Shown in pieces: positions 12,982-55,374 of a stretch of DNA of 64,000 nucleotides (its first letter is position 1; every line of letters starts with the position of its first letter). The notes beneath the pieces were generated by a model, which searched no databases, had not been told where the DNA came from, and saw only the letters and a list, made by a program, of their open reading frames with translations. The position numbers and the translations under genes are program-made. The stretch is from assembly GCA_038087875.1 (NCBI GenBank), contig CM075989.1, positions 14,756,001 to 14,820,000 of the forward strand, given 5' to 3'. The stretch comes from Malacoraja senta (Eukaryota).

Positions 12982-15479
12982 TGCTTTAATGACCCAGTCA
13001 TTAAAGCATACAATGAACAGCACCGGTCCCAGCATCGATCGCTGTGGTCTACTGCTAATCATGTTTCCAATCAGATAAAGCAGCACTCTACCATCACCCT
13101 CTACCCTTTCTTACCAATAACTCAGACCCATTTTGGCAAGACAAGTAATATATATCTCTTTAATAGAAAAGTCAAACAGCAGATGCATTCGAGCTGTGCA
13201 ATCAATGGATGGCAGCATTAGATTGGAAGGCCTACGCCATTGCTGAAGAAAGCAGTAGGCCTGAGGAGTTAGCAAAGGAGAACACAGGCATTGAAGAGAA
13301 AAGGGAAGAGCCACGCAGGTGCAGTCTCATGAGAAACAAGAGGACACAAAGCCAGGGTGACACAGTCGGCAGAGAAGCTGTCTCACAACTCCAGAGATCC
13401 AGGTTTAGTTCTGACCTCAATGTGTGGAGTTTGCTCCCTGTGATCATGCAAGTTCCCTCTGGGTGAAGTTCGTTTTCATCCCACATCTCAAAAATGTTCA
13501 TGTTGGTAGGTCAACTGGCCACTAAATTGCCCCCAGAATGTAGGCGAGCGGTAGAATCTGGGGAAGATGCAAAAGGGTGAGGGGGGAGGGGGGGTTGGAG
13601 GGGGGGGGGGGTGGTAGCATTAGTGTAAAAAAATGGGTTCACAGGCTTGTAATGGGATCCCAACCCAAAATGGCATCAGTGCATTTTCATCCAAAGATAC
13701 AATATTGTCCATCAATCTGGTTTTCCTATCCAGCAAGGATAAACTTGCAAATAAGGGAATATAGCCAAGGTTCTCATCATGGATTCCTGGCATAGTAGGT
13801 GGCTCAACAGAATGAGTAGCACCAGGGTAAAAAAAAAAGGGGACAGTAAGAATCAGCAATGTGAAGGGAAAAAATCAGTCATGATCTTGACTGACAGTGC
13901 AGACACTAGAGCTAAATAGTTGACTCCTGCTCATGTTTACTCAGTAGATGCCGAGTCCTTAGGCACTACTAAAATTTCCAGTGGTGGGTTATTGGTAATA
14001 CTGATACCAATGACATCCATTCAACAGTTTAGAATTTCTAAGAAAATGAAAAAAAATAATGCAAATGCCAGAAATCTAAAATAGAAACATAAAATGTTAG
14101 TGGTGTTAATGTTTCAGGTTGAGGAACCTTCGTCGGAACTAGAAAAAAGCAAACAGTTAACGGGGGGAGGGTGGAGGAGGCATGAGTAGAACAAAGGGAT
14201 CTCTGCAAAATACAAAATGCTATAAAGGAAGTCAGCAGGTTAGGCAGAATCTACAGAGGGAATGGACTGATGGTGTTTCGGGTTGAGACCCTTCTTCAGA
14301 CGCAACCCTTCAGATTCCAGCAACTGCAGTTTCTAGTGTCTCAAAAATATCTCTGTTCGAGCAAGAACAAATGGAAGCATGCCAATTAACTTACTTGACG
14401 CCTGATCCGAAGAGATATTTGTTCTTTGTTCTACCCATCCCTCCCCCTCTGGCAACCAACTTGTTTTACTACTTTCCTCGTTTTAATTAGGGGTCTTGGA
14501 GCAAAACATTAACTCAGCTTCTCTTTCCACTTAAACCTGCTGAGTATTTGCAGCATTTTCCGTTTTATTCCGACCAGGTTTGCACGGGGTATTAAAGACC
14601 TAGTGATGGATCGAGTACAAAAGAGTACAGATGCTGGTATCTTGAGCAAAAGTGCTGGGAGCACTCGGTGGGTCAGGCAACATCTGCTGCAGGAAATGGG
14701 CACACCTAATTAGGGATGCGACAGATTTCAGATTTTGAAGTAATTCACATTGTGTACAGATGGATTAAGAAATGGGAGAGAAATCTGAAAAGAGTGGGTG
14801 TGAAGAGTAAAAGAGGCAGAGGCGTGGTGGCCACTGGGTTTTCTGATTTGGAAACTGGTGCTACACAAGTCATAGTGAATTTTTTTAAATTTGAGCAACT
14901 GAGTGAAAACCATAAACATCACAACTGTGGAATTTGCATATTCTCCCTGAGACCGCATGGGTTTCCTCCAGGCCCTCTGGTTTGCACCCACAACCCAAAG
15001 ATGAGGTCATTGATAATTAATTGGCCTCGTGTATGCAAGTGCTTGGTAGATTCTGGAGGTGGGGGGGGGGGGGGACAGGAAAATGTCATCACAGACTTGA
15101 AAGGCCAAATGGCTTCTGTGTCTCAAGAAGTATGGAACTAGTTCAGTTTCAGTTTAGTTTATTGTCACGTGTTCCGAGGTACAGTGAAAAGCTTTTGTTG
15201 CGTGCTAACCAGTCAGCAGAAAGACAATGCATGATTACAATCGAGCCATTTACAGTGTATAGATACATACATGATAAGGGAATAACATTTAGTGCAAATT
15301 AAAGCCAGCGAAATATTACAGAACTCCAGAAATAATGATACCGTGAGAAGACATGGATCACTTCTGATATCTCAGGACAACCATTCAACAAAGGTGGATA
15401 ATGTTTATGAAATATATCATTACCTTAAGGAGCAAAAACCTGGCGCATGATCTTGTGCCATGATCTTATTGAATACCTG

Positions 15480-15920
15480 GACAGGTTTGAGGGACCACGT
15501 GGCCTTCTCCTGCTCTCGTTTTCCTGTTTCCTGTTGCAATATCAGCCAGGCACGCATACGTTATGGACGGCCCACCAGAATGACTCTGTTTCAGGTCTCA
15601 AAGCTGAGGACATTGCCCTGCGAGAGAATATTTTACCCTACATGTCAATTAGAAAGGCTTTGTGAATACAGAAGGCATCGTTCCAGTACATTGAGATGCC
15701 AGCTACAGGTTGTCAAAGTCTCAGAAGAATTCCAGAGGGCAGCAATCACCTCTGCCCAGTAGAACATGACTCCCACGCACACCCATCTGCCCCAACAAAC
15801 ATCATCTGCCCCAACTGTGTCATCTGTAACTCCCACATCCTCAGACTCCTCAGAACTCAGGGTTGGAGAGTAAGCAAGCCACTCTTCATCCCAAGGGGAC
15901 TGCTTAAGAAAAATAGAGCA
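15480..15920 (+). mobile_element. Degenerate RTE LINE 3' end (another fragment at about 56925-57030)
   Basis: C2H2-like terminus (YCNKVCGSGIGLFSHLKTHR at 56.9 kb) and the gagggactgcctaagaa-type end. Confidence 0.6.
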
Positions 15921-18900
15921 TCGTACAACAAGGTGCAGAGAACTCCATGGGGAACAGATCTACGCTTCAATTGGTTTAGCATTTGCAAATGATAATTAGA
16001 ACAGCTGTATGTTTTTCATTACAAGAACGGTAACTTTGAACAATTATCAAGTGGCTACAATTGTGTTGTGATCGCTGCATCCTAGTAAAATGGGCAGCCG
16101 CACTCACTCTCCACAGGAGGGTCAGTGTCTGTATCACCCTCAGGCACACACAATGACAGGACCGGTTCTCACCAGCTGAAACAAAGCAGTCGGGGACAGC
16201 ACACAACCTGCAGAATTGTCGGACAATAAGAAGGACCAAAGATCAGCTTGTGCAGATATCAGAAGGAATGGTGACTTTTAATGCTTTACGCACCTGATTT
16301 AAGGCTAAAACTTGAAAGGGATTTGATTTCAGCAGCAGACAGGGATAGTTAGTGAATATCATTGTGGCAGAGGCAAGTTAATTGCAACAAGAGCACAACT
16401 GTTCACAAGTTAGCACAGCTGGTCTTTGGAAGAAGCAAATCCTTATTTGTTTTCCTCTCCCACCTGACTGCACAGTGTTCCACACCCCCCCCCCCCCCCC
16501 CCCCACCACACACATTGCCCAGGAAACAATGCAGGGGTGGGGGGGAGCTCTACTGTCAGAGTGCATAGGTGCAGGAGGCACAGCCCATTAACGGTTGTCG
16601 TTCCACTTCACCTGGGCAGCTGTTGACGATAAATCACGGCTCTCCACTCCACAAAAACCCTCCCTTTATTTTATACTGCACAGGTCACTGAAGGATCGGA
16701 CCAAACCCAAATTTAAAGTAGCCATTCCCTTGACAACCTGGACCTGTGCCCTATCACTGATGTTTGCTTTCTCATTACTCCTCCCTTTGAGTAGCTCAAA
16801 AAAACGCTCCTTTCAATCACAACGTTCTGATGGTGGGGTTATTGACCCGAAACAGCCATTCTTTTTCTCACCACAGGTTGACTGACTATCAGCTACGGAG
16901 TATTTCCAGCATTGGGTGTTTTGTGTTAGAGCAGAGGCTGGTGAAAAGCTGCAAACATTTGAGAAAGTGATCCTTTCCCATGACTGTTTTTTTCCATAAA
17001 TTAACGCTCTCCATCAGGTGAGGCCAACAATGGCCATCTGGAAAATGAAGCACCTCATGGATGCAAGAAAGAGGGACATTTTGAGTGTCTGCTTGGCAGA
17101 AACTACCCTCGAATGTAATACAGATTCAACGCAATCAATGCAAAATGACACCAAGTCAACTCACGATTGATCAGCCTGTCGTCACCTTCACAACTATTCG
17201 CAATCAGCTTCACAATTATTCCAGATAGTAATCCTTTAAATTACAACAATCCAGGCCAACATGGTCACCAAATCCTGCATAGCCAGTGGGCAGTGGGTTT
17301 TTCATTGCTGGCAGCTTTGCAAGAGGAATAGTCCCCTTAAAGATTACTCTTACATTTAAAAAAATAGTTCCACCTACTACCTCAATGCACTGACTGCTAA
17401 CCAGTTGTACAATTAAAGGCACAATTTACAAGACATAATGAACCATGGTCAAAAATTGTTACATGTTGCTGCTAGCTATTAATTGGTGAGCATACTCATG
17501 CATGTGAAACCACCCCAAGGCAAATATATTACTAGATCATAAGAACAATGTAAACAATAGAAATCCATCCCCATTGTTGTTTAAAGTGAACGCTAGGCAT
17601 CTTTCAGAGGCACAGCAATGCATTTAGAACAGTTGCTAATTGAACAGGTTATAAATACTATTTTTTTTAGTTAATAAACTAGGCTATGTAGATACAAAAT
17701 GCCAAAGTAACTCAGTGGGTCAGGCAGCATCCATGGAGAACATGGATACATTTTGAGTTGAGACCCTTCTTAAGACAGACGTTTCCCAAACCTAAATGTC
17801 ACATATCCATGTTCTCCAGAGAAGCTACCTGATCCTCTGAGTTACTCCATCACTGTGCATCTTTTTTTGTAAACCAGCATCTGCAGTTCCTTTTCTAGAC
17901 TATATAGGTGTCAGGCTCAATATTCAGGATCAAGACTCATATTGTAATCAATACAGGAAAAACCAATCTATTTTGCAGACCTTCTTTGTTTTATGCATTA
18001 GCAAAAGTTATCAAATCAAACATAAAATGTACACAGTGCCTTGGCACGTTACAGGAACTGGAACGATCTGTTCAATGAGCTTGTTTATTAAATACACTTC
18101 AATTTAGCACTAGTGCCAAATCAGATTGGGATTTAAAAAGCAGAGCTCAATGGGGAATGGTGGATGGAATATGTACCTTACAATTGAACCAATTATTGTA
18201 GAAAATGGCCCATATACTTCAAACACGGAGCTCAAACTGTGAGCAAATACTTTAATATCAGTGAAGACTCCAGACTGATGGATTGGACTTGGCACAGTTC
18301 TGGTCATTACTCCAAATACAATAGCTGCCTCAAGAAACACCTTCCACTGAGTTTCCCTTTACAGAATATTCTGAGTTAGTTATTCCCATCAATAAACAAA
18401 ACCAACAAATGATCTCAGATGTAGGGAGGGGCTGAGGTGGTGTAGGTGGTGTGAGGCAGGGAGGTAGGTAGGTGTGGTTTTGGTGCTTCAGAATTGCCTG
18501 ATCTGTCCAGGCAGACTGGCTGGAAAGAAGACAAGGCAGAGATGTCAATCCCTGAACAATCCCTCTTTCCCCACAAAAATCATTAGATTGGAATTTAAAT
18601 ATACTTCAAAATTAGGGAACCATTTTGTGCATCTTACAAACCCAAAGCAGAAACAACACCAAGAATTAGTTACGGCTCCAATACTTTAATGGTTGCCAAG
18701 CAAACTATACATCCACACACATGAATGATAATGGCCTGATTCAATCTAATGGTCTGATGCTTATGAAAGGAAACCTTCCAACAAGATACAGCGTGACTCG
18801 TTGCATAGAATGGAAATATTTAGCTGAAGGCCACTCCAGATAATGCTGTAGGGTACAATCTCTAGGCATAACAAATAACTAGGCCAAGGTTTGTGAGGAA

Positions 18901-21017
18901 GTCAGTATCACAAAGGATCCTGGTTAATATTTTAGTTCCAAAACAAAATGCCAAAGGAATGGAGAAATTTAGGGCAGTCTACTCCCAGTTTTATGTCTCT
19001 TATCGACCCCCTACCCTACCCCCTTCCCCCTACCCCTGCCCCCTACCCCCCCCCCTTTTCTATTTTGCTTTTATCTTGAGAAACCAAAATGTATGGGGTT
19101 TTTTTTAAAGGATCCTCAAACCCAACTGAAGGAAAGCATCACAAAGGACATTTCACACAAAAAATCACACTACATGGCTCGTTTATTGGGAGGCTAAAGT
19201 ATTTTACTACACAATGTAAATGCCGGATGTTATAACAGTTCTTTTTTTTCTCCATTCCTAAATCTCATTTTCTTCTAAATCTATTTCCAGTCACTGACGG
19301 GAGTTGTGACCAGTGGAGAAGTTGTTGAAACAGCAATTGCCAACAAACGCATGAAGCTGATGTTGTTAATAATCATTCCTTTGGAGACCACTTCTGGTCT
19401 TCATCCAAATGTTCTCCATTTCCTGGGCTGGGTCTGTTCCCAAAGCTCAATTACTGCTGTTCCTGGTGCCAGTTTCCACAAATCTTACCGCTGGAAGATT
19501 AGGAGCCACAATAGGCAGTGTTCACAATATCGGTTCACCACTTTGAGATAACTTCAAGTCACTGCATTTTCCTTTATAAAAAATAAGGAAATTGCTTCAC
19601 GCTCCACGTTGTAACACACACTTTCACAGGCTGTCCCTGGAATATGCACAACCGATTTATCGACACCCTACACACTATGAGCTCCCATAATATTATTAAA
19701 CTCAAAAGTCCAACATACGGATATATGTTCATTCCTATAAAAGGAGGATTAGCCTCTCCGTCCCCTCCCCTCACTTTTAGTCATTGTGGGGGAGGGGACT
19801 TATCAGTTTGGTGATAAGCTCTTTTAATCCCATTCATTAGAATACTGTGAAGGTAATGGTTACCACAGTGATTTTTATGTATTTTTGAATTACGGGCAAA
19901 ATCAACCAACAGAGATCTGCAAAAAGAGCATCTGCTCGTTACCCAAGGACAACCTGTACTGAGCTCACGCCTTGGCAGGGTATTGCTCGGTCATCTGACA
20001 GAAGAGAGGGAATGATCATGTACACGAGTCCCACTCCAGTCTTGTCATCTAGGGTGTCTGAAATGCAACATTATCCTTGGGATGATACAGCAAGTTACTG
20101 CCCCTCTGGGTGGTATCTATACAAGTGGCAGTGACAGTGCTTTGAACATGTTCTGAAGAATTTCCCCACTGTCCTGCTTATTATTCATCACTAGATCAAT
20201 ATCACCATAAAAGACTATCTGGTTATTAATTTAATGTAATCCATAGGATTTTCCTGTGCAAAATTTTATGCCACCTCTCTCATATTGAAGCATCAAGTCC
20301 ACCTACGAATCAACTAACAAGTATTTTGAATATCCTCTTCAAAAGGAACTGTAATGCTTAGCCTTTCCTCTCCCTCTCTCCCCCATTCCCTCTCTACCCT
20401 TGTTTAAATTCATAAACCAATTCCACTTTTTGTTTCAGCAAAACCCAATACGTCATTGTTACTGAAAGAAAATCAATTTGCACCTAAATTGCCTGTCATT
20501 ATTAAAAGATTAGCATCAACTCTATGTCACTAGAGGAAGGGGGACAATGCAGCAGGTGACAAAGACCCCCCCAGGATGGAAAGCCTAATGTGTGTACGGT
20601 TCAATCCTCAATCTGCTGGGATGTAGGACAGAAAAACACATCAGAAACTCGGAAGGACTTTTGAAACAGTGACTCACAAGATGTTAAGAGTAATTGTGGT
20701 TAGGATGCAAGAAGAGTGGGCAGCAAGGTACAGGTTCACAAGTCAGAAATCACATTGCCATCGCCTCAGTCCAACTCAACTGCACAGCAGAGCAGCTCCA
20801 TGATTTAAAATTAGCCTGTTATCCTCAAAAAAAAATTAGCTCATCTATCAGATATCACATCAAAACATTAAATATGTGTTGATTCGGCATTTCAGTCACA
20901 TCTTTAGCTGCATTAAAAATGAAAGCATTCAGCGTCATGCATCTGAAAGAACTCAAAGCAAACTTGGCCAGGTGATAGTCCACCAATCTGTCTCTTTAGA
21001 ATATTACTGAGCAGTTA

Positions 21018-46784: not shown

Positions 46785-47219
46785 CAATAATGCTACAGTA
46801 AAACTCAACACTAAGCATCCAACCAATCATCATTGTAGTCACAGTATTCCACCAAAAAAAAGTGGCACTTATTTCTACCAAGTATTTGGCTCAGAGTTCC
46901 TTACTACACAATTATTTGGATTAAGAATATGATTAGAAACATAATTAATATAATTAAAAACTATAAAATGAAATATGCATATTGTAACCCAAGAAACTAA
47001 TACCCAATTTAAAGAATTTGTTTATAATCTATTGTTTCACATGTCAAAAGTCATACCAATATTTTGATTTACATAATAAAGGCATCTCTGGAGAACATGG
47101 GCAATGGCCAAATGTTCTTCGATGCCCAGCTGCAGTGAGCCAGCACAGTTGCAAGGCTCAGTCCCCCGCCCACTGTACCGCGGGGAGCTGTCGTACACGT
47201 TGCCACGACCCTGCCTCAC

Positions 47220-47489
47220 TCACATTGAGCGGTGAAAGGCCGGTGGTCGGGGAGCACTAACCGGCCTCGCCTCGCCGCCCCCTTTACCTTTACCGTCGCC
47301 GCCCGCGGCCCGAGGCGGCGCTGAGTCGTCGGTGTTGTCGGTGCCGCCGGGAGCCGGATTGTTGCCCTGCGCCTTGGCTTGTTCCAGGCGATACTGTTTA
47401 TACAGCGGCCTGTAGATGTACAGTCCGCCCGCCACCCCCACCACGGCCGCCAGCGTCAGCTGAGGGAAGGTCAACCCGCCCGGCAACAT
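47220..47489 (-). CDS. PIGBOS1: PIGBOS1 mitochondrial outer-membrane microprotein
   Basis: MLPGGLTFPQLTLAAVVGVAGGLYIYRPLYKQYRLEQ matches recalled human [36 protein letters not shown]. Single TM segment, syntenic with CCPG1. The C-terminal end is uncertain. Confidence 0.9.
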   Translation of the reverse strand: MLPGGLTFPQLTLAAVVGVAGGLYIYRPLYKQYRLEQAKAQGNNPAPGGTDNTDDSAPPRAAGGDGKGKGGGEARPVSAPRPPAFHRSM

Positions 47490-47800
47490 GGACGCTCAGT
47501 GGATGCGCCAACCACCCACCGGCAACATGGCCGCTCAGTGGATGCGCCGCCCGGCAACATGGCCGCTCAGTGGATGCGCCGCCCGGCAACATGGACGCTC
47601 AGTGGAGGCGCCGGCCCGCCAACCACCGGCAACATGGCCGCTCAGAGGAGGCGCCGGCCGCCCGGCAACATGGCCGCTCAGTGGATGCGCCAACCACCCA
47701 CCGGCAACATGGCCGCTCAGAGGAGGCGCCAACCACCCAACCACCGGCAACATGGCCGCTCAGTGGAGGCGCCGGCCCGCCAACCACCCAACCACCGGCA
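47480..47800. repeat. GC-rich minisatellite (32-43 bp units, 8 copies plus a partial) containing the PIGBOS1 start context
   Basis: Core ccggcaacatgg(c/a)cgctcag(t/a)gga(t/g)gcgcc repeated with variable (a/c)-rich spacers. Confidence 0.95.
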
Positions 47801-47864
47801 GTGCAAAGCGCACGCGCGGCCTCCTCTAAAAAAAATTAAAATTGGGTTTTTTTCCCCCTTTTTC

Positions 47865-48024
47865 CTTCAGCCCACAATATTTAATATGTAAAAGAATATG
47901 TGATTCTGTTCCATTCTGTTTGTAGTTTGTTTGTTTGTTTTTTTGCACAAAGTCCGCGAGCATTGCCACTTTTCATTTCACTGCACATCTCGTATGTGTA
48001 TGTGACGAATAAACTTGACTTGAC
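47865..48024 (+). mobile_element. LINE 3' tail (Rex1-like) next to the PIGBOS1 promoter
   Basis: Ends ...gtgtatgtgacgAATAAActtgacttgac, a typical LINE end of AATAAA plus short tandem repeat. Confidence 0.6.
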
Positions 48025-51000
48025 GACCTCTCCACCAACACTCAATTCACTCCAAAGGTGGAGGAAGGAGCTATAGACCAAAGATACACACAAGAAGCTG
48101 GAGTAACTCGCCCCCTGTATCAAAGGACTACATCGACTTATTGGGAAGTAGAAAGTAAACAGAGTACGTTTCCCACAAGCATTTAAAACCCTTTCCTGCT
48201 TCCACACTAAGCATTGCTACAACAGAATATATTCTGATTCAATCATGCATGTTCCTAGTCCCAGGGAGAAAAAGGGTACAGCAAGATGGTTTCTCAGTGA
48301 TACGTATCCCTCCCCCCCCCCCCCCCCTTCACAGAATTAAACTAAACAATTAATCTGCATTTTAGAACAACATTGATCAATAGCAATAGTTTCCAAATGA
48401 ACACAGAATGCCTCTCTTCAAAGCTTTTCTTCGATCTCTATTATAGTTGGGAAATCTGTTTTCTACTGCAAAAGTTACATTTTGTAAAAACAAACCATGG
48501 CCGAGTTTGGTATAAAAAGGTAGAACTTGTTCAGCTCAATCGATAAAAAACTAACTTTCCGTGCAAAATATATACTTTATTTATTGCATAACAATACCCT
48601 TCTATTTCCTCTATCTTTCTATCTTTGTCCCGCCCATTCTCCTGACAACAGTATGAAGAAGGGTCTCGACCTGAAACATCACCCATTTCTTCTCTCCAGA
48701 AATGCTGCTGCCTGTCCCGCTGAGTTACTCCTGCATTTTGTGTGTCTCCCTTCCACTCCCTTCTTGGATTGCAGACCCACTTAAACACAAGTGTGTAGAA
48801 AGGAACTGCAGATGCTGGTTTACACCGAAGATGGGCGCAAAAAGCTGGATTAACTCAGCGGGTCAGGCAACATCTCTGGAGAAAAGGAATAGGATCGATT
48901 TCACGCCTTTGAATCGTGTCGCAGACCTGCATGCAACGATATATGTTGAGAATGGAAACATTTCACTCAAATCATAGAAAGCATGTTAATTATTGAAATT
49001 GACTAAATTCAATAAATTATCATGCTTCTTAAATTGATATGGCAAATTTATTAATGTTTACGCTTCCAGTTTACCAGGGGTGAAATAGGGGGACCTTACA
49101 GCATACTAAACATTTATTTTGAAAGGTTTTTCATTATGTATTTATATTTCTCTCAAACTTACAAGCCAATCTTATTGGAGATGCGAGAAACTGCAGATCC
49201 TGAAATCTTGAGCTAAAAAAAGCGCTGGAGTAACTCAAGTGGATCAGGTAGCATCTATGGAAGGAATGAACAGGCGAGCCTATTGGGTTGCGAGCCTTCT
49301 TGAGGACATCAGTTCCTCCAGCACATTGCTTTTTGCTCAAGATAATATAATTGATTTTGTGTTCCAAGTCAGTGCAGGAGATTGTGTTGACTCAATCTTT
49401 CTCTTTCCATACCCTCCTCACACTTGACCCATTGAACCCTGTGTTTACCATTTCTTGGCTTACTTATCCAGCTGATTCAGATCACACAGCAAGATTTGTC
49501 AACCTTCTCCGCCGTCTATAAAACCTATTATTTTTGTGTCATCTGCAAACTTACTAACCATGCTTTGTACATTCTCATCCAAATTGTTTGGTTGACTAAT
49601 AACAACAACAGGCCCAGCACCAATTCCTGTGGCACATCACTAGTTACAGGCCTCCAATTAAAAAAAAAAAAAAAAAAAACCTTCCACCATCAGTTTCTAC
49701 TTTCAACTATCAAGCCAATTATGTATCCAATGCTCTCTCTGGAATTTATGTTCTAAACTTCCTGACTAGCTTATCATACAAGACTTTATCAAAGGCTTAC
49801 TAAAATCCGTATAGACAGCAACCATCTCCCAGCCCTCATCAATCCCCTTGGTTATCTCTTCAAAAAGAACAGATTTATGAGACACATTTCCCCTCACACG
49901 AATCAATGCTCCCCAAGCAGTCCTTATCTATCCAGATGGTACAAGATCTTGTCTCAGATATTTGTTTGCTATTCGTATTACTCAAATTGCAAACCTTAAA
50001 ACCCATAAAATATATAACAACGCTGCATTAGTCAATTAAAGTGGTATAACAATATTGGACATAAATATGTGCAACCCAAGACCTTAATAACAAAGGGAAC
50101 TAAGAATAGTTAAGACCTCATCTTAAGTGGATTTTATTCATAAAGGTGAGATTATTAACTTGCAACGCAGCTTTCCTTATATCTGATGTCTCGATTTATT
50201 ACCACCATTTGAATTGCGGTAGATGTTAATGAAAGAGGGATTATGGCAGAAGGTTGGACTTTCTTCAGTTGAATCCTGGAAAACCGCCATCAGCACAGGT
50301 TCACTAGCTTAATATGCATTGGTTGGGGCCAGGCTCCAGGTCAGGTGCTCTGAAACTGGTTAGGGATGGATATTTAACTGCAATGGTTATGTTAAAGTTG
50401 AAAATATTCAATAATACTATATTTTATCGTCACTAAATTAAATAGGCGTGTGTAGGAAGCTAATTGAAAACTTGCACACAGAAGCCTTCTTTAAATCTAT
50501 ACAAAATGAAATGCACTTTTACGCACAAACACAATGAGGCTACAATTCCCTGCTCGCAGACTTCACATCTATCAGAATTAACTCCCCCTCCTCCTAATGG
50601 GGTTCTGAATTAGTAATTGCATATTGTACCTTTCCAAATATTCAGCAATACACCTCTGCCAATGGTACTCCACAGATAGAACCCACAAGTATAAACTTCA
50701 CAGATAGCAGTCAGGTGTGATCAATATCTAAATATAGTCAAAAACAAAATGCTTATGCCTTATTGTCCTTTAATGGCTTCTGAGCTTAGTGGCAGTGTTT
50801 TTCTCCTTTTTACCAGGTATTGATGGAACAAGATCATACCCAATAAATTCCTTATATATTTTGCTGCCATTCTAACATCTCTCTTTGGAAACAAGTTTAC
50901 TTTGGAAATTAAAAAAGTGTTGAACTAACTCAGCAGATCAGGCAGCATCTCTGGAGAGCATGCATAGGTGATGTTTCAAGTCAGAACCTCTCTTCAGGCA

Positions 51001-51257
51001 GAGGAGATGATCTGTTGAATCAAGAAACTCAAATAATGGTCACAAAAGACTGAAAACCAAGTTCTTAAATTAACAACAAAAAAACATTTTGAAACCACAG
51101 AATTTATTTTTGCAGTAGCTGCATCAGTATACAGTAAATCAGATTCATATACATGTAGAAATATTGGGTGACCCTTCCTGGTTGATATATTCTTAAGCAC
51201 ATACAAACTCGCCACACGAATAAAACAGCTTCACAAATAAAGAGTTAAGCCAGAACT

Positions 51258-51263
51258 TTTATT
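51258..51263 (-). terminator. Candidate CCPG1 polyadenylation signal AATAAA (second candidate at 51103-51108)
   Basis: AATAAA on the minus strand about 650 nt after the stop, at the end of an AT-rich, repeat-free 3'UTR. Confidence 0.5.
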
Positions 51264-51906
51264 ATCAATTGATTTTAACATTTTTGTTTGCCTACAATTG
51301 TTCATTTTGTCAAATGGAAAATGTAGATGCAATGTAACTGATTTTAAATTAATAATGAAACCCATCTCTTTTATCCCTTGAAATCATAAAAGGCAGATAT
51401 ATATATTTGTGTAAAATTATTCACAACATGGGGGAAGGTAAAAATGGACCAATTTTTGCCATGGAATTAAATTACAATCTTCAAAAGAAATTTAAATTCA
51501 GCACACCAATATTAATAACTTACACAATATGGAATTTAGGTTCACATGATAGCAAATTACGAATTTGCTAAGGCAAAAGAGACTTGCATTTCATGCACAT
51601 ACACCAGTATACGAATAGACTTTGTAAATGCATTAAAGATCCAGCAACTTGAACTCTTACTTAATCCTAAACTTTGTTTAGCACAACATACTTTGCACAA
51701 CACAACTGCTCAGGAAATCTCTAACCAGCACATTGCAAATACAGATGGAATATTATTAGCAAAACTACATCTACTCTTATTATTCAAAGTCAAATGAAAT
51801 GCATATTGTTTCAAAACAAACGTCATTATTCTTAGGCATGTACCACAAACAGCAATCAGATAAGTCTGAACATGTTCAAACACATACTTATGAAGAACAC
51901 ACCCAT

Positions 51907-52108
51907 TTAATATTTTGGATCAAAAGGCATCGGCCCCAGCTCAATTTCAACATTCGCCATGTGTCTTCCATTGGTACGTCCTGCCTTGTTCCATTTACAA
52001 TCCCTGTGGTGGTAAGCCTGCTGGTATTTCCTTTCAGGTCTCTGTTGCCTGGAGCCAGATGCATGTTTAGAATTATGCTTTCTGTATTTATCAGCATCGT
52101 AAAGTGGA
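51907..52108 (-). CDS. CCPG1: CCPG1 last coding exon
   Basis: Acceptor tttgcag|T completes a TGT codon. Ends [24 protein letters not shown], versus recalled human [24 protein letters not shown]. Confidence 0.95.
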
Positions 52109-52454
52109 CTGCAAAGATAAAAATTATTCATTATGGCCTTTAAGTAAAATAGCCAAGATTGGTCTATTCATTTGTAATTCCCAATATGCATTAGTATAAG
52201 TGCAATAGGTTTTTAGAAATACTATGGCCACATTTCAAGCAGCATTATAATAATCTTACTTTAGAAAAGGAGTAGATGAATGTATTGATAATGATCCTTT
52301 TGATACTTGGTCCTGGAGCAGTGGTAAAGCAAAAAGGAACTCAGCTGGTTGAGGAGATATTTTATGGCTATCGGCGAATATTATACATATATTTCATTTT
52401 TCAATCTATAGACACCTAGATATCAATCAATAGACCACCTTGGTATCAATCAAA

Positions 52455-52692: not shown

Positions 52693-53526
52693 AAAGTAAT
52701 GAATCTTTTTCTTATTGAGGGATCCTAAATTAAGTGGATTAGATTTGATGAATCTATCTTCTATTAATGGAGATCTAAAAATCTGCGGTCCAAACTGGCA
52801 ACTGGATATTCAGTGCAGATTCCAACTGTCCAATGAAGACACTGGCTGGCCAACTGACAGGAAATTAATTGCAATTGATCTTCAATACCTCTTACATAGT
52901 TAAAAAGAAACAGGTGTAGATGACTTTTATAAACTGGAATATGTCATGAACAGAAATCTGGCAGAGTCCTTATAGTTTGCCAAATATGAGAATATAGTTG
53001 TAGTTCTTAAGATTCCTTTGTGTTCATATTTCTGGAATTTTGTTTGTCTCGCACTATTATAGCTGAAATTCTGTTATGTTTACTCACTCCTACACCCAAA
53101 ACATTCATTACAGAATTCCAAATATAACAGAAAATACTGGACGGTTCTCAGCAGGTTGGTGACACGATGGAGAAAGACATTCAACGTTTCCGTTGTGGAG
53201 GAACGGCCATCAATCCAAAATGCAAACTATGTCTCTCTCCGCAGATGCAGCCCAACATGCTGAGGAAGTCCAGTATTTTCTGTTTTTATTTTAAACATTT
53301 AGCCTCTGGTGGCTTTTAGTTTAGCAAATTCCTATTAGCTAGGATTGAATCAATCACGTATCAAATCAAAAACAAATCCCAAAGTTATATACAGTATCCT
53401 GCTCTATATCGGCCAATTTCAAATGGCGAGTTACATTCTGAATATCAAGTGAATGTAATTGTACAACTTAAATAATTTCAGAAACAAACAATTCTAAATC
53501 AACTGGATAAAAGAGCAAACTATTAC

Positions 53527-54971
53527 CATGGTCCAAATTGATTAATGTAATTGTCACCAAACAAGTGCTGATAGATGTATCCATCCAGGTCATCAAAACC
53601 ATCATGGTTGCCTTCTTGGTGCTCTGCAATATCTTCAAGATAATCTTCAACATCATTAACAAAATCAGAGAATAACATTTGGTCATGTATAAAAAGCCCA
53701 TTACGGAAAAAACGGTTGATAAATTTCTCCAGCTCACTCCAGCGTTGGAAGTCGACCATCTCTCGTTGAAGGTAATTATGGAGAAGCTCATGAAATTCTT
53801 CCATCTTGATGGGGTCAAGGACTTTATTAAATAGACTCAAAGATTCTTGGTGGGCACATTCAAAAACATCAGAGCAACCTTTAGGGCTCTTGTTGTGTGC
53901 ATGTTTTCCCAAGTGATCATGTTCACCCGATTCAAAATTGTGAGAGTTCTCAGTGTACATTGTGTGCGGTTTCCTTGAATTGCTACCATAGATCTCCTCA
54001 TGAGTGGCTTGTTTGGGTTTATGTTGATAGGAATCTTTGTCTCCATGAACACCATGTTGTCTGCACTTGTTCGTTTTACATGGGTGTTCGTTGTGACGTT
54101 GCTGGAATCCATGACGTCTAGTTTTCGCATCTGCGTCATCACGTCTCTTATTTTTGTGAAATAATTTTGTTGCTGAGTTTTGGAAGTTCTGGAATGTGGA
54201 TTTAACAGAATCAGAGAATCTCTTAAGATTTTCTTTAACAGCTTCTTTTGCCAGTTTAATCTTTTCTTTATGATGACGCACAAACTCTTTGGTTGAGTTT
54301 TTCACAGCGTCAAACGTATTCTTAAATGATCTTATAAAGCCTTTAGATTGCTTCTTTTTATCCCTAGTTCCATAAAACTCCCGATTTGTTTTTGTCTCTT
54401 GCTTCTTTGCTGTTTTCTTAGTTGCAGGGTCCGTGTTTTCTTCCTTTGATTCAATATAAAGTCTTTCCCACAAGTCAGAGCGTTGCTGTTCAAAATCCAA
54501 TTTTTTCTCTAGCTCTGCAAGTCTTGTTTGTAAACCTTCTGTTATTTTACCATCTCGGGCTGTATTAGGCATGGATTGAAAATGACTCAAGGTATCCAGT
54601 TCCTTACGCAGTACATCAGTTATTTCTCTTTCTTTATCCAATTCCTTTCTTAGCATCTGAGCCTCAGTCACAAGGGTCCCCTTCTGTAGAAGGAAACTGT
54701 GTACTTGTTGTTTTTCTTCTTCTAGATGATCCTTCAGTTTCTGGTTTTCCGTGATGATTGTTTCAGCATCCATTCCCTTTCCTTCCAATGTCCTGATTTG
54801 TTCCCTCAACTTCCGAAGCTCATTCTGCAACAAGGATAATGCTTTCTCTTCATGCTCCAGGGATTCTTTCATACGCTGGTTTTCTTTGGCAAGCACTTGC
54901 TGCTGTGACTCAACAGAAAGCCTCTCATCCACAGTCTCTTTTAAACGAGTTTCCAAGTTTTCTCCTTGTGA
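53527..54971 (-). CDS. CCPG1: CCPG1 large luminal-domain exon
   Basis: Contains LDFEQQRSDLWERLY, KNSTKEFVRHHKEKIK, KENLKRFSDSVKSTF and FIHDQMLFSDFVNDVEDYL, all characteristic of CCPG1. Acceptor ttattcag|TCA, donor CCATG|gtaata (phase 2). Confidence 0.97.
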
Positions 54972-55374
54972 CTGAATAATCATAATATAAATAGTTAAAT
55001 ATCCATTTATAAAGGCAATGTGCGTTATAAAGTCAGTTTATTAGTCATATTATGGGGCAACAAAATTAAATAGGAGCCAAAGTCTACATTTCAATAACTA
55101 TTAAGTACATGCTACATTTTAAAATATCCTTAATAGACCTATTGAAAGACCTCACTGAAATTATTGAAAATTCTAAATAGGTATCCCTTCTGCTGTTTAC
55201 TAGTTGATGGTCACACATATTTTTCAGAGAAGACTGTTCAGAATCACTGAAGCAGATGAGGAATCAAACTTTACTTTTTATTGTAACAATTTCTTTGGAA
55301 AAATAGAAATCTCATCTGTAGAAACCTTTAAGTTGTAGGTACCATCCCTAACTTGCTGGGAAATTTTAAGGAAA

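What the first reader, a model, noticed from the sequence alone, without database searches (positions are those of the whole stretch)
47830..51100. PIGB is missing from its expected position between PIGBOS1 and CCPG1
Established (recalled): the human order is RAB27A(-), PIGBOS1(-), PIGB(+), CCPG1(-), with PIGB (GPI mannosyltransferase III, about 550 aa, multi-exon) head-to-head with PIGBOS1. Seen: only about 3.3 kb separates the PIGBOS1 island from the CCPG1 3' end, largely Penelope-derived, CR1 and LINE remnants, with no convincing PIGB motif (for example PDEYWQSLE or HKEFRF). Inference: because GPI synthesis is essential, PIGB has probably relocated in this lineage or entered the locus later in bony vertebrates. 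Either way PIGBOS1 would exist independently of PIGB.
Basis: partly seen in the sequence, partly recalled or inferred. Interest (0 to 1): 0.72.

Follow-up and report, generated by a model that had tools for sequence, protein, structure and literature searches.

The report
No PIGB between PIGBOS1 and CCPG1
In this skate, and in every shark, ray and chimaera I could check, the GPI-anchor gene PIGB is absent from the spot beside the microprotein gene PIGBOS1 where bony vertebrates keep it; this is a real, old gene-order difference of modest interest.

Summary
Window 47,830-51,100 is intergenic DNA. It lies between the PIGBOS1 CpG island (PIGBOS1 ORF 47,223-47,489, minus strand, Pfam PF23670) and the CCPG1 poly(A) signal (51,103-51,108; CCPG1 stop codon 51,907-51,909).

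No PIGB exon exists in the interval or anywhere in the 64-kb window. TBLASTN with pigeon, frog, lizard and invertebrate PIGB gave a best E of 0.13. An exon-level PIGB profile gave a best E of 6.3. The same profile found 10 collinear exons in each of two control genes, sturgeon and eagle PIGB.

Misassembly is excluded. The window has no N, and two other skate assemblies are collinear with it at 90-95% identity.

CCPG1 is followed 1.8-7.9 kb downstream by PIGBOS1 on the same strand, with no PIGB between, in three skates, a sawfish, a stingray, two sharks and a chimaera.

A sturgeon and an eagle both carry PIGB inverted between the two genes. So one single-gene rearrangement happened on the stem of either cartilaginous or bony vertebrates. 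The direction is unresolved.

I could not search for where PIGB now sits in cartilaginous fishes.

The parts
47223..47489 (-). PIGBOS1 open reading frame (ATG at 47,489). The conserved transmembrane core is residues 5-41. A possible splice donor lies inside the C-terminal tail.
   Evidence: Pfam PF23670 E=2.2e-12. 90% identity to L. erinacea PIGBOS1. The core aligns with sawfish, shark, chimaera, sturgeon and eagle PIGBOS1.
47201..47800 (.). CpG island over the PIGBOS1 coding start and leader; it ends sharply at 47,800.
   Evidence: GC 0.67-0.72 and CpG o/e 0.79-1.07 in 200-bp bins.
47519..47788 (.). Tandem repeat (32/43/75-bp periods) that copies the PIGBOS1 start-codon region. It is not part of any PIGB sequence.
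   Evidence: Tandem Repeats Finder. R. longicauda has a single copy that aligns to each unit.
47830..51100 (.). Intergenic interval between the PIGBOS1 island and the CCPG1 3' end. It holds no PIGB exon on either strand.
   Evidence: no PIGB signal. Collinear with L. erinacea at 94% and, in pieces, with R. longicauda and sawfish.
48629..48907 (.). Two adjacent short interspersed-repeat fragments (about 20 copies elsewhere in the window). Further fragments lie at 49,224-49,299 and 50,914-50,997.
   Evidence: Self-BLAST of the gap against the rest of the window.
51003..51906 (-). CCPG1 3' untranslated region. It has an AATAAA signal at 51,103-51,108 and is conserved across cartilaginous fishes.
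   Evidence: Identity is 79-86% to sawfish, 77% to Heptranchias and 69% to Callorhinchus. Signal position.
51907..52167 (-). CCPG1 last coding exon with its stop codon (TAA at 51,907-51,909).
   Evidence: The translation matches the C-terminus of the L. erinacea CCPG1 gene model.
53526..55037 (-). Large CCPG1 coding exon (open frame of 504 codons).
   Evidence: Hits named CCPG1 proteins carrying PF27631/PF27636, at 94-96% in skates down to about 50% in bony vertebrates.

Best explanation
The interval is ordinary intergenic DNA, and PIGB is truly not there.

Shown: the compact tandem arrangement, CCPG1 3' end followed 2-8 kb later by PIGBOS1 on the same strand, is the shared state of all living cartilaginous fishes sampled (chimaera, sharks, rays, skates). 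Bony vertebrates carry PIGB inverted between the two genes, head-to-head with PIGBOS1.

Inferred: the difference comes from one single-gene rearrangement on the stem of either Chondrichthyes or Osteichthyes, more than 400 million years ago. No relic is expected, and none is seen.

Inferred: PIGB, being needed for GPI anchors, lies elsewhere in cartilaginous-fish genomes.

My lean, about 60:40 and by inference only, is that PIGB was originally beside PIGBOS1 and left the locus in stem cartilaginous fishes. PIGBOS1 is seen only in chordates, while PIGB is pan-eukaryotic, and small opposite-strand genes typically arise at an existing divergent promoter.

Shown: PIGBOS1 in these fishes keeps an intact ORF and a CpG island without PIGB beside it. 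That it therefore runs from a promoter of its own is an inference.
For: No PIGB signal in the window, with strong positive controls:
- Searches found nothing in the window.
- With a profile built only from non-vertebrate sequences, 10 collinear exons were recovered in each of eagle and sturgeon PIGB (E 2e-4 to 4e-23). The best hit in the window was E=6.3, and in Heptranchias E=5.4.

Not an assembly artefact:
- The window has no N.
- It is collinear at 92-95% with L. erinacea and at 90-93% with R. longicauda across the interval.

Gene tables and DNA from other cartilaginous fishes, all with CCPG1 then PIGBOS1 on the same strand and no PF03901 gene between:
- L. erinacea, 3.8 kb.
- R. longicauda, 2.0 kb.
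- Pristis, 4.5 kb.
- Callorhinchus, 1.8 kb.
- Carcharodon, 7.9 kb.
- Heptranchias, 6.2 kb.
- Hypanus, 7.2 kb.
- DNA-level scans of the Pristis, Callorhinchus and Heptranchias loci were also negative.

Bony vertebrates:
- Sturgeon has CCPG1(+), PIGB(-), PIGBOS1(+).
- Eagle has PIGBOS1(-) 327 bp from PIGB(+), and PIGB overlaps CCPG1(-).
- In human, PIGBOS lies on the strand opposite PIGB with overlapping first exons (PMC6814811).

The PIGBOS1 core is conserved in all of these species.
Against: - I could not show that PIGB exists elsewhere in any cartilaginous fish.
- No cyclostome or other outgroup locus was examined, so the direction of the change is not established.
- For Carcharodon and Hypanus only annotation tables were available, not DNA. 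Mobula, also table-only, was uninformative: no gene at all is called in the 10 kb after CCPG1.
- dN/dS on the 38-codon PIGBOS1 core is noisy (0.24-0.9 between distant pairs). It adds little to the argument from ORF retention.
Confidence: 0.9

Rival explanations
1. Cartilaginous fishes keep the ancestral jawed-vertebrate state. PIGBOS1 began as a free-standing gene downstream of CCPG1, and PIGB was transposed into the gap on the stem of bony vertebrates. The famous opposite-strand pairing would then be secondary.
For: The PIGB-less state is uniform across the whole class. No PIGB relic is present. PIGB in an annelid and a crinoid has no RAB27, CCPG1 or PIGBOS1 neighbour within 10 kb.
Against: This scenario is equally parsimonious with the opposite direction. 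It requires a multi-exon gene to land within 1 kb of the PIGBOS1 start, head-to-head. Relics would have decayed under either scenario. The invertebrate micro-synteny is weak evidence.
Confidence: 0.4
2. Skate-specific relocation: PIGB left the locus only in skates (the narrow reading of 'this lineage').
For: None beyond the window itself.
Against: Sawfish, stingray, two sharks and a chimaera show the same arrangement.
Confidence: 0.01
3. Assembly collapse or mis-join removed a PIGB-bearing segment from this window.
For: None.
Against: There is no gap in the window. Three independent skate assemblies are collinear through the interval. Five further species from independent assemblies show the same order.
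Confidence: 0.01
4. PIGB has been lost altogether in cartilaginous fishes, and another mannosyltransferase adds the third GPI mannose.
For: The scan's notes on this genome never mention PIGB.
Against: PIGB is conserved from protists to vertebrates (5,440 relatives). GPI anchoring is essential in vertebrates (established knowledge). Earlier notes on this genome describe GPI-signal-type protein tails. Only a tiny fraction of any genome was examined.
Confidence: 0.03

Closest known systems
Bony-vertebrate PIGBOS1-PIGB-CCPG1 locus (human 15q21; eagle and sturgeon loci seen here)
   Same: CCPG1 and PIGBOS1 are neighbours on the same strand. PIERCE2 and DNAAF4 lie upstream of CCPG1. PIGBOS1 encodes the same short protein with an N-terminal membrane helix (PMC6814811).
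   Different: In bony vertebrates PIGB lies inverted between the two genes, 0.3-0.9 kb from the PIGBOS1 start. In the eagle it is interleaved with the CCPG1 3' exons. In the skate and all cartilaginous fishes sampled there is no PIGB, only 2-8 kb of non-coding DNA.
Public gene models of the same locus in other cartilaginous fishes (Leucoraja erinacea, Rhinoraja longicauda, Callorhinchus milii, Carcharodon carcharias, Heptranchias perlo, Hypanus sabinus)
   Same: Identical gene order and orientation. The window is 90-95% identical in DNA to the two skates.
   Different: Only the gap length differs (1.8-7.9 kb), along with lineage-specific insertions and the start-codon tandem repeat in this species. 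The arrangement is visible in public annotation. No paper discussing it turned up in the two full-text searches run for that purpose.
Lineage-specific single-gene transposition, or differential loss of whole-genome-duplication copies
   Same: One gene differs in position between two ancient vertebrate lineages while its neighbours stay collinear.
   Different: The mechanism is not identified here. It would need the present position of PIGB in cartilaginous fishes, for example beside the RAB27B paralogous region, which I could not search.

Membership tests
PIGB (GPI mannosyltransferase III, glycosyltransferase family 22, Pfam PF03901) gene in the interval or window | Exons that match the GT22/PIGB profile, collinear on one strand | tested here: not met
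   HMM exon scan best E=6.3. TBLASTN best E=0.13, with scattered hits. Controls recovered 10 exons each in eagle and sturgeon.
PIGB (GPI mannosyltransferase III, glycosyltransferase family 22, Pfam PF03901) gene in the interval or window | Conserved N-terminal PDEYWQSLEV motif | tested here: not met
   0 matches with up to 3 mismatches in the window. The same pattern pulled 63 true PIGB-family loci from metagenomes.
PIGBOS1 (Pfam PF23670) | Profile match above the curated cut-off, with the conserved N-terminal membrane helix | tested here: met
   47.4 bits against a 27-bit cut-off. The core aligns with eight species, including sturgeon and eagle.
PIGBOS1 (Pfam PF23670) | Lies on the strand opposite PIGB at a shared divergent promoter (the origin of the name) | tested here: not met
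   No PIGB within 47 kb on one side or 16 kb on the other. The upstream neighbour is the CCPG1 3' end.
PIGBOS1 (Pfam PF23670) | Mitochondrial outer-membrane location and a role in ER stress signalling | not testable with these tools
   Known for the human protein only (PMC6814811).
CCPG1 | Homology to named CCPG1 proteins carrying the CCPG1_N and CCPG1_C domains | tested here: met
   The window exon hits 927 proteins, the top ones named CCPG1 with PF27631/PF27636.
Canonical bony-vertebrate micro-synteny CCPG1 / PIGB / PIGBOS1 | CCPG1 and PIGBOS1 adjacent on the same strand | tested here: met
   Window coordinates.
Canonical bony-vertebrate micro-synteny CCPG1 / PIGB / PIGBOS1 | PIGB inverted between them | tested here: not met
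   Absent in eight cartilaginous-fish species. Present in sturgeon and eagle.

The most novel reading that the evidence does not exclude
Cartilaginous fishes have no PIGB gene at all and build the third GPI mannose with a different enzyme. My evidence does not exclude this, because no whole genome could be searched. A milder novel reading, at about 0.4, is that PIGB arrived in the locus only in bony vertebrates, so the PIGB/PIGBOS1 divergent pair is secondary.
Probability: 0.03. Interest if true: 0.85.

Novelty: new member of a known kind. Interest (0 to 1): 0.3.

Why it matters
PIGBOS1 is named and usually discussed as the opposite-strand partner of PIGB. [quoted passage not shown]

A whole vertebrate class keeps an intact, conserved PIGBOS1 with no PIGB nearby. 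The microprotein gene therefore does not depend on PIGB's promoter or transcription. This gives a natural 'uncoupled' comparison for regulation studies. It also marks one clean single-gene rearrangement that separates cartilaginous from bony vertebrates.

Beyond that, this is an ordinary synteny difference that can be read off public annotation.

Tried and rejected
- Two homologue searches with skate PIGBOS1, alone and as a profile, found only skate proteins. They gave no outgroup.
- I had no PIGB sequence, so I scanned metagenome contigs for the back-translated PDEYWQSLEV motif. One full-length ORF from those contigs went into the exhaustive representative search. That search returned pigeon, frog and lizard PIGB plus invertebrate PIGBs (named).
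- The last word-based search went to CCPG1 rather than PIGB. It lists only 120 rows, and a tetrapod PIGB query would have been swamped by tetrapods.
- Neighbours of PIGB in a crinoid and an annelid were uninformative for direction.
- Pfam on ten gap ORFs found no transposon domain. Rfam on 46.5-52.3 kb found nothing.
- A motif check found no RAB27A coding exon in the window.
- dN/dS on the PIGBOS1 core was too noisy to use.
- The Atlas look-ups gave only phylum-level taxa.
- Literature and supplement searches for PIGB in cartilaginous fishes found nothing.
- The scan's own notes on this genome never mention PIGB, RAB27 or mannosyltransferases.

Full report
**What is at the coordinates**

The window comes from a rajid skate. 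Its DNA is 92-95% identical to Leucoraja erinacea and 90-93% identical to Rhinoraja longicauda across this locus.

- PIGBOS1: on the minus strand, 47,223-47,489 is an ORF that matches Pfam PIGBOS1 (PF23670) at E=2.2e-12, above the curated cut-off. It is 90% identical to the annotated L. erinacea PIGBOS1.
- CpG island: the ORF sits in a CpG island covering 47,201-47,800 that stops abruptly at 47,800.
- Tandem repeat: the island contains a tandem repeat of the start-codon region at 47,519-47,788. The scan noted this earlier (s1-195548).
- CCPG1: the 504-codon open frame at 53,526-55,037 (-) hits named CCPG1 proteins. The last coding exon ends with TAA at 51,907-51,909. A minus-strand AATAAA lies at 51,103-51,108.
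- CCPG1 3'UTR: the block 52,299-51,003 is conserved with sawfish (79-86%), sevengill shark (77%) and chimaera (69%). This fits a 3'UTR of about 0.8-0.9 kb.

**Is PIGB there?**

No tool could supply a PIGB sequence directly, so I built a test set in four steps.

1. The back-translated PDEYWQSLEV motif has no match in the window, even with 3 mismatches. It pulled 63 eukaryotic contigs from public metagenomes.
2. Several of those contigs carry full-length GT22 ORFs. One of them, L053, matches PF03901 at E=3e-108.
3. An exhaustive search with the L053 ORF returned 5,440 relatives.
4. Among them I identified pigeon Pigb, Xenopus and lizard PIGB, and crinoid, annelid and bivalve PIGBs by name.

Results against the window and the two skate loci:

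- TBLASTN with all of these queries gave nothing better than E=0.13, and the weak hits are scattered.
- A profile built only from the non-vertebrate ORFs was scanned against every stop-to-stop frame of 12 or more codons. The best hit in the window was E=6.3.
- The same profile picked up 42 exon-sized pieces in other intron-bearing contigs at E 1e-52 to 0.003, 41 of them at or below 6e-5.
- It also found 10 collinear exons in each of eagle and sturgeon PIGB, at E 2e-4 to 4e-23.

The test is well powered. The whole 64-kb window lacks PIGB on both strands, not just the gap.

**Artefact?**

The window contains no N. The interval is collinear with two independent skate assemblies. The only differences are insertions or deletions of a few hundred bases and the repeat expansion. 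Pieces of the gap (50,795-50,107; 48,453-48,116) also align in order with the sawfish gap. A collapse or mis-join is not credible.

**How widespread is the arrangement?**

Using CCPG1 as an anchor, I fetched the locus or its gene table from other species. The table gives the distance from the CCPG1 coding end to the PIGBOS1 coding start on the same strand. No PF03901 gene is called between them in any of these species.

| Species | Group | Distance |
|---|---|---|
| This window | skate | 4.4 kb |
| L. erinacea | skate | 3.8 kb |
| R. longicauda | skate | 2.0 kb |
| Pristis pectinata | sawfish | 4.5 kb |
| Hypanus sabinus | stingray | 7.2 kb |
| Heptranchias perlo | shark | 6.2 kb |
| Carcharodon carcharias | shark | 7.9 kb |
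| Callorhinchus milii | chimaera | 1.8 kb |

- Where DNA was available (Pristis 76 kb, Callorhinchus 37 kb, Heptranchias 70 kb), the PIGB scans were also negative.
- Mobula was uninformative: no gene is called in the 10 kb after CCPG1.
- The sturgeon Acipenser oxyrinchus has CCPG1(+), PIGB(-, 543 aa), PIGBOS1(+) within 9 kb.
- The harpy eagle has PIGBOS1(-) 327 bp from PIGB(+), and the PIGB 3' half is interleaved with CCPG1(-).
- In human, PIGBOS lies on the strand opposite PIGB with overlapping first exons (PMC6814811).

**Interpretation**

The absence is a class-wide character of cartilaginous fishes, not a skate peculiarity. The presence of PIGB is shared by both branches of bony vertebrates. 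One single-gene rearrangement on one of the two stems explains everything. No inversion of the flanking genes is needed.

Without a cyclostome locus, the two directions are equally parsimonious.

- I lean about 60:40 to PIGB having been beside PIGBOS1 originally. PIGBOS1 is seen only in chordates (phylum-level only), while PIGB is pan-eukaryotic. Short opposite-strand genes commonly arise at an existing divergent promoter. This is inference.
- The alternative is that PIGB arrived in stem bony vertebrates. It is the more interesting reading and remains open.
- Invertebrate PIGB neighbours did not help.
- A third mechanism, differential retention of duplicated copies after the early vertebrate genome duplications, would look the same. 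It can be tested only by finding where PIGB now lies.

Either way, PIGBOS1 keeps an intact ORF with a conserved membrane-helix core in all eight cartilaginous-fish sequences and in the bony vertebrates. Its retention therefore does not depend on PIGB being adjacent. dN/dS on 38 codons is too noisy to add much.

**What remains untested**

- I could not show where PIGB is, or that it exists, in any cartilaginous fish. The scan's notes on this genome do not mention PIGB. I found no paper on the subject.
- Complete loss is very unlikely on general grounds, but it is not excluded by my data.
About 10% is short interspersed-repeat fragments. No transposon protein domain or Rfam family was detected.
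- No RAB27A coding exon was recognised in the window by a motif check. That part of the recalled gene order is not confirmed here.

**Verdict**

The finding is a real but modest synteny difference that is already visible in public gene models.

Noticed in passing
window 51003-52299 (-): The CCPG1 3'UTR is unusually well conserved for non-coding DNA. It is 77% identical over 1.3 kb to a sevengill shark and 69% over 0.9 kb to a chimaera. The neighbouring intergenic DNA is alignable only to sawfish. This may reflect post-transcriptional control of this ER-phagy receptor.
   Followed up: partly
window 47519-47788: The tandem array copies the PIGBOS1 start-codon region. R. longicauda has one copy that aligns to every unit, so the expansion is young.
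   Followed up: partly
window 48708-49960 and 50268-50798: Two segments are present here and in L. erinacea but missing in R. longicauda. These insertions or deletions account for the gap being twice as long in this species.
   Followed up: no
L067:28604-29472 (Callorhinchus milii): Chimaera PIGBOS1 continues after the conserved core into a long Glu/Lys-rich repeat tail (EEKKEEVKVK units). The tail length is very variable across species, from 54 to about 100 residues.
   Followed up: no
L053:2136-4112 (-), marine metagenome contig: This is an intron-free, full-length 659-aa PIGB with a 2-kb 3' tail, probably an mRNA-derived contig from an unsampled marine invertebrate. Its nearest known relatives are only 45-53% identical. 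Contig L028 is about 90% identical to pigeon PIGB exons, so it is bird DNA in a metagenome.
   Followed up: partly
L068 (Harpia harpyja) 14270-19629: In the eagle, the coding ranges of PIGB and CCPG1 overlap by 5.4 kb on opposite strands, with interleaved 3' exons. In the sturgeon the two 3' ends are 2 kb apart.
   Followed up: no
cluster of P0178: A 90%-identity cluster of Heptranchias CCPG1 isoforms also lists eight 48-aa ocean-metagenome proteins. This looks like a clustering artefact in the protein collection.
   Followed up: no
window 1-47000: No RAB27A coding-exon motif (P-loop, switch II, NKxD, ETSA) was found on either strand. A GC-rich stretch lies at 24-28 kb. RAB27A coding exons, if they are upstream as in human, lie outside the window.
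   Followed up: partly
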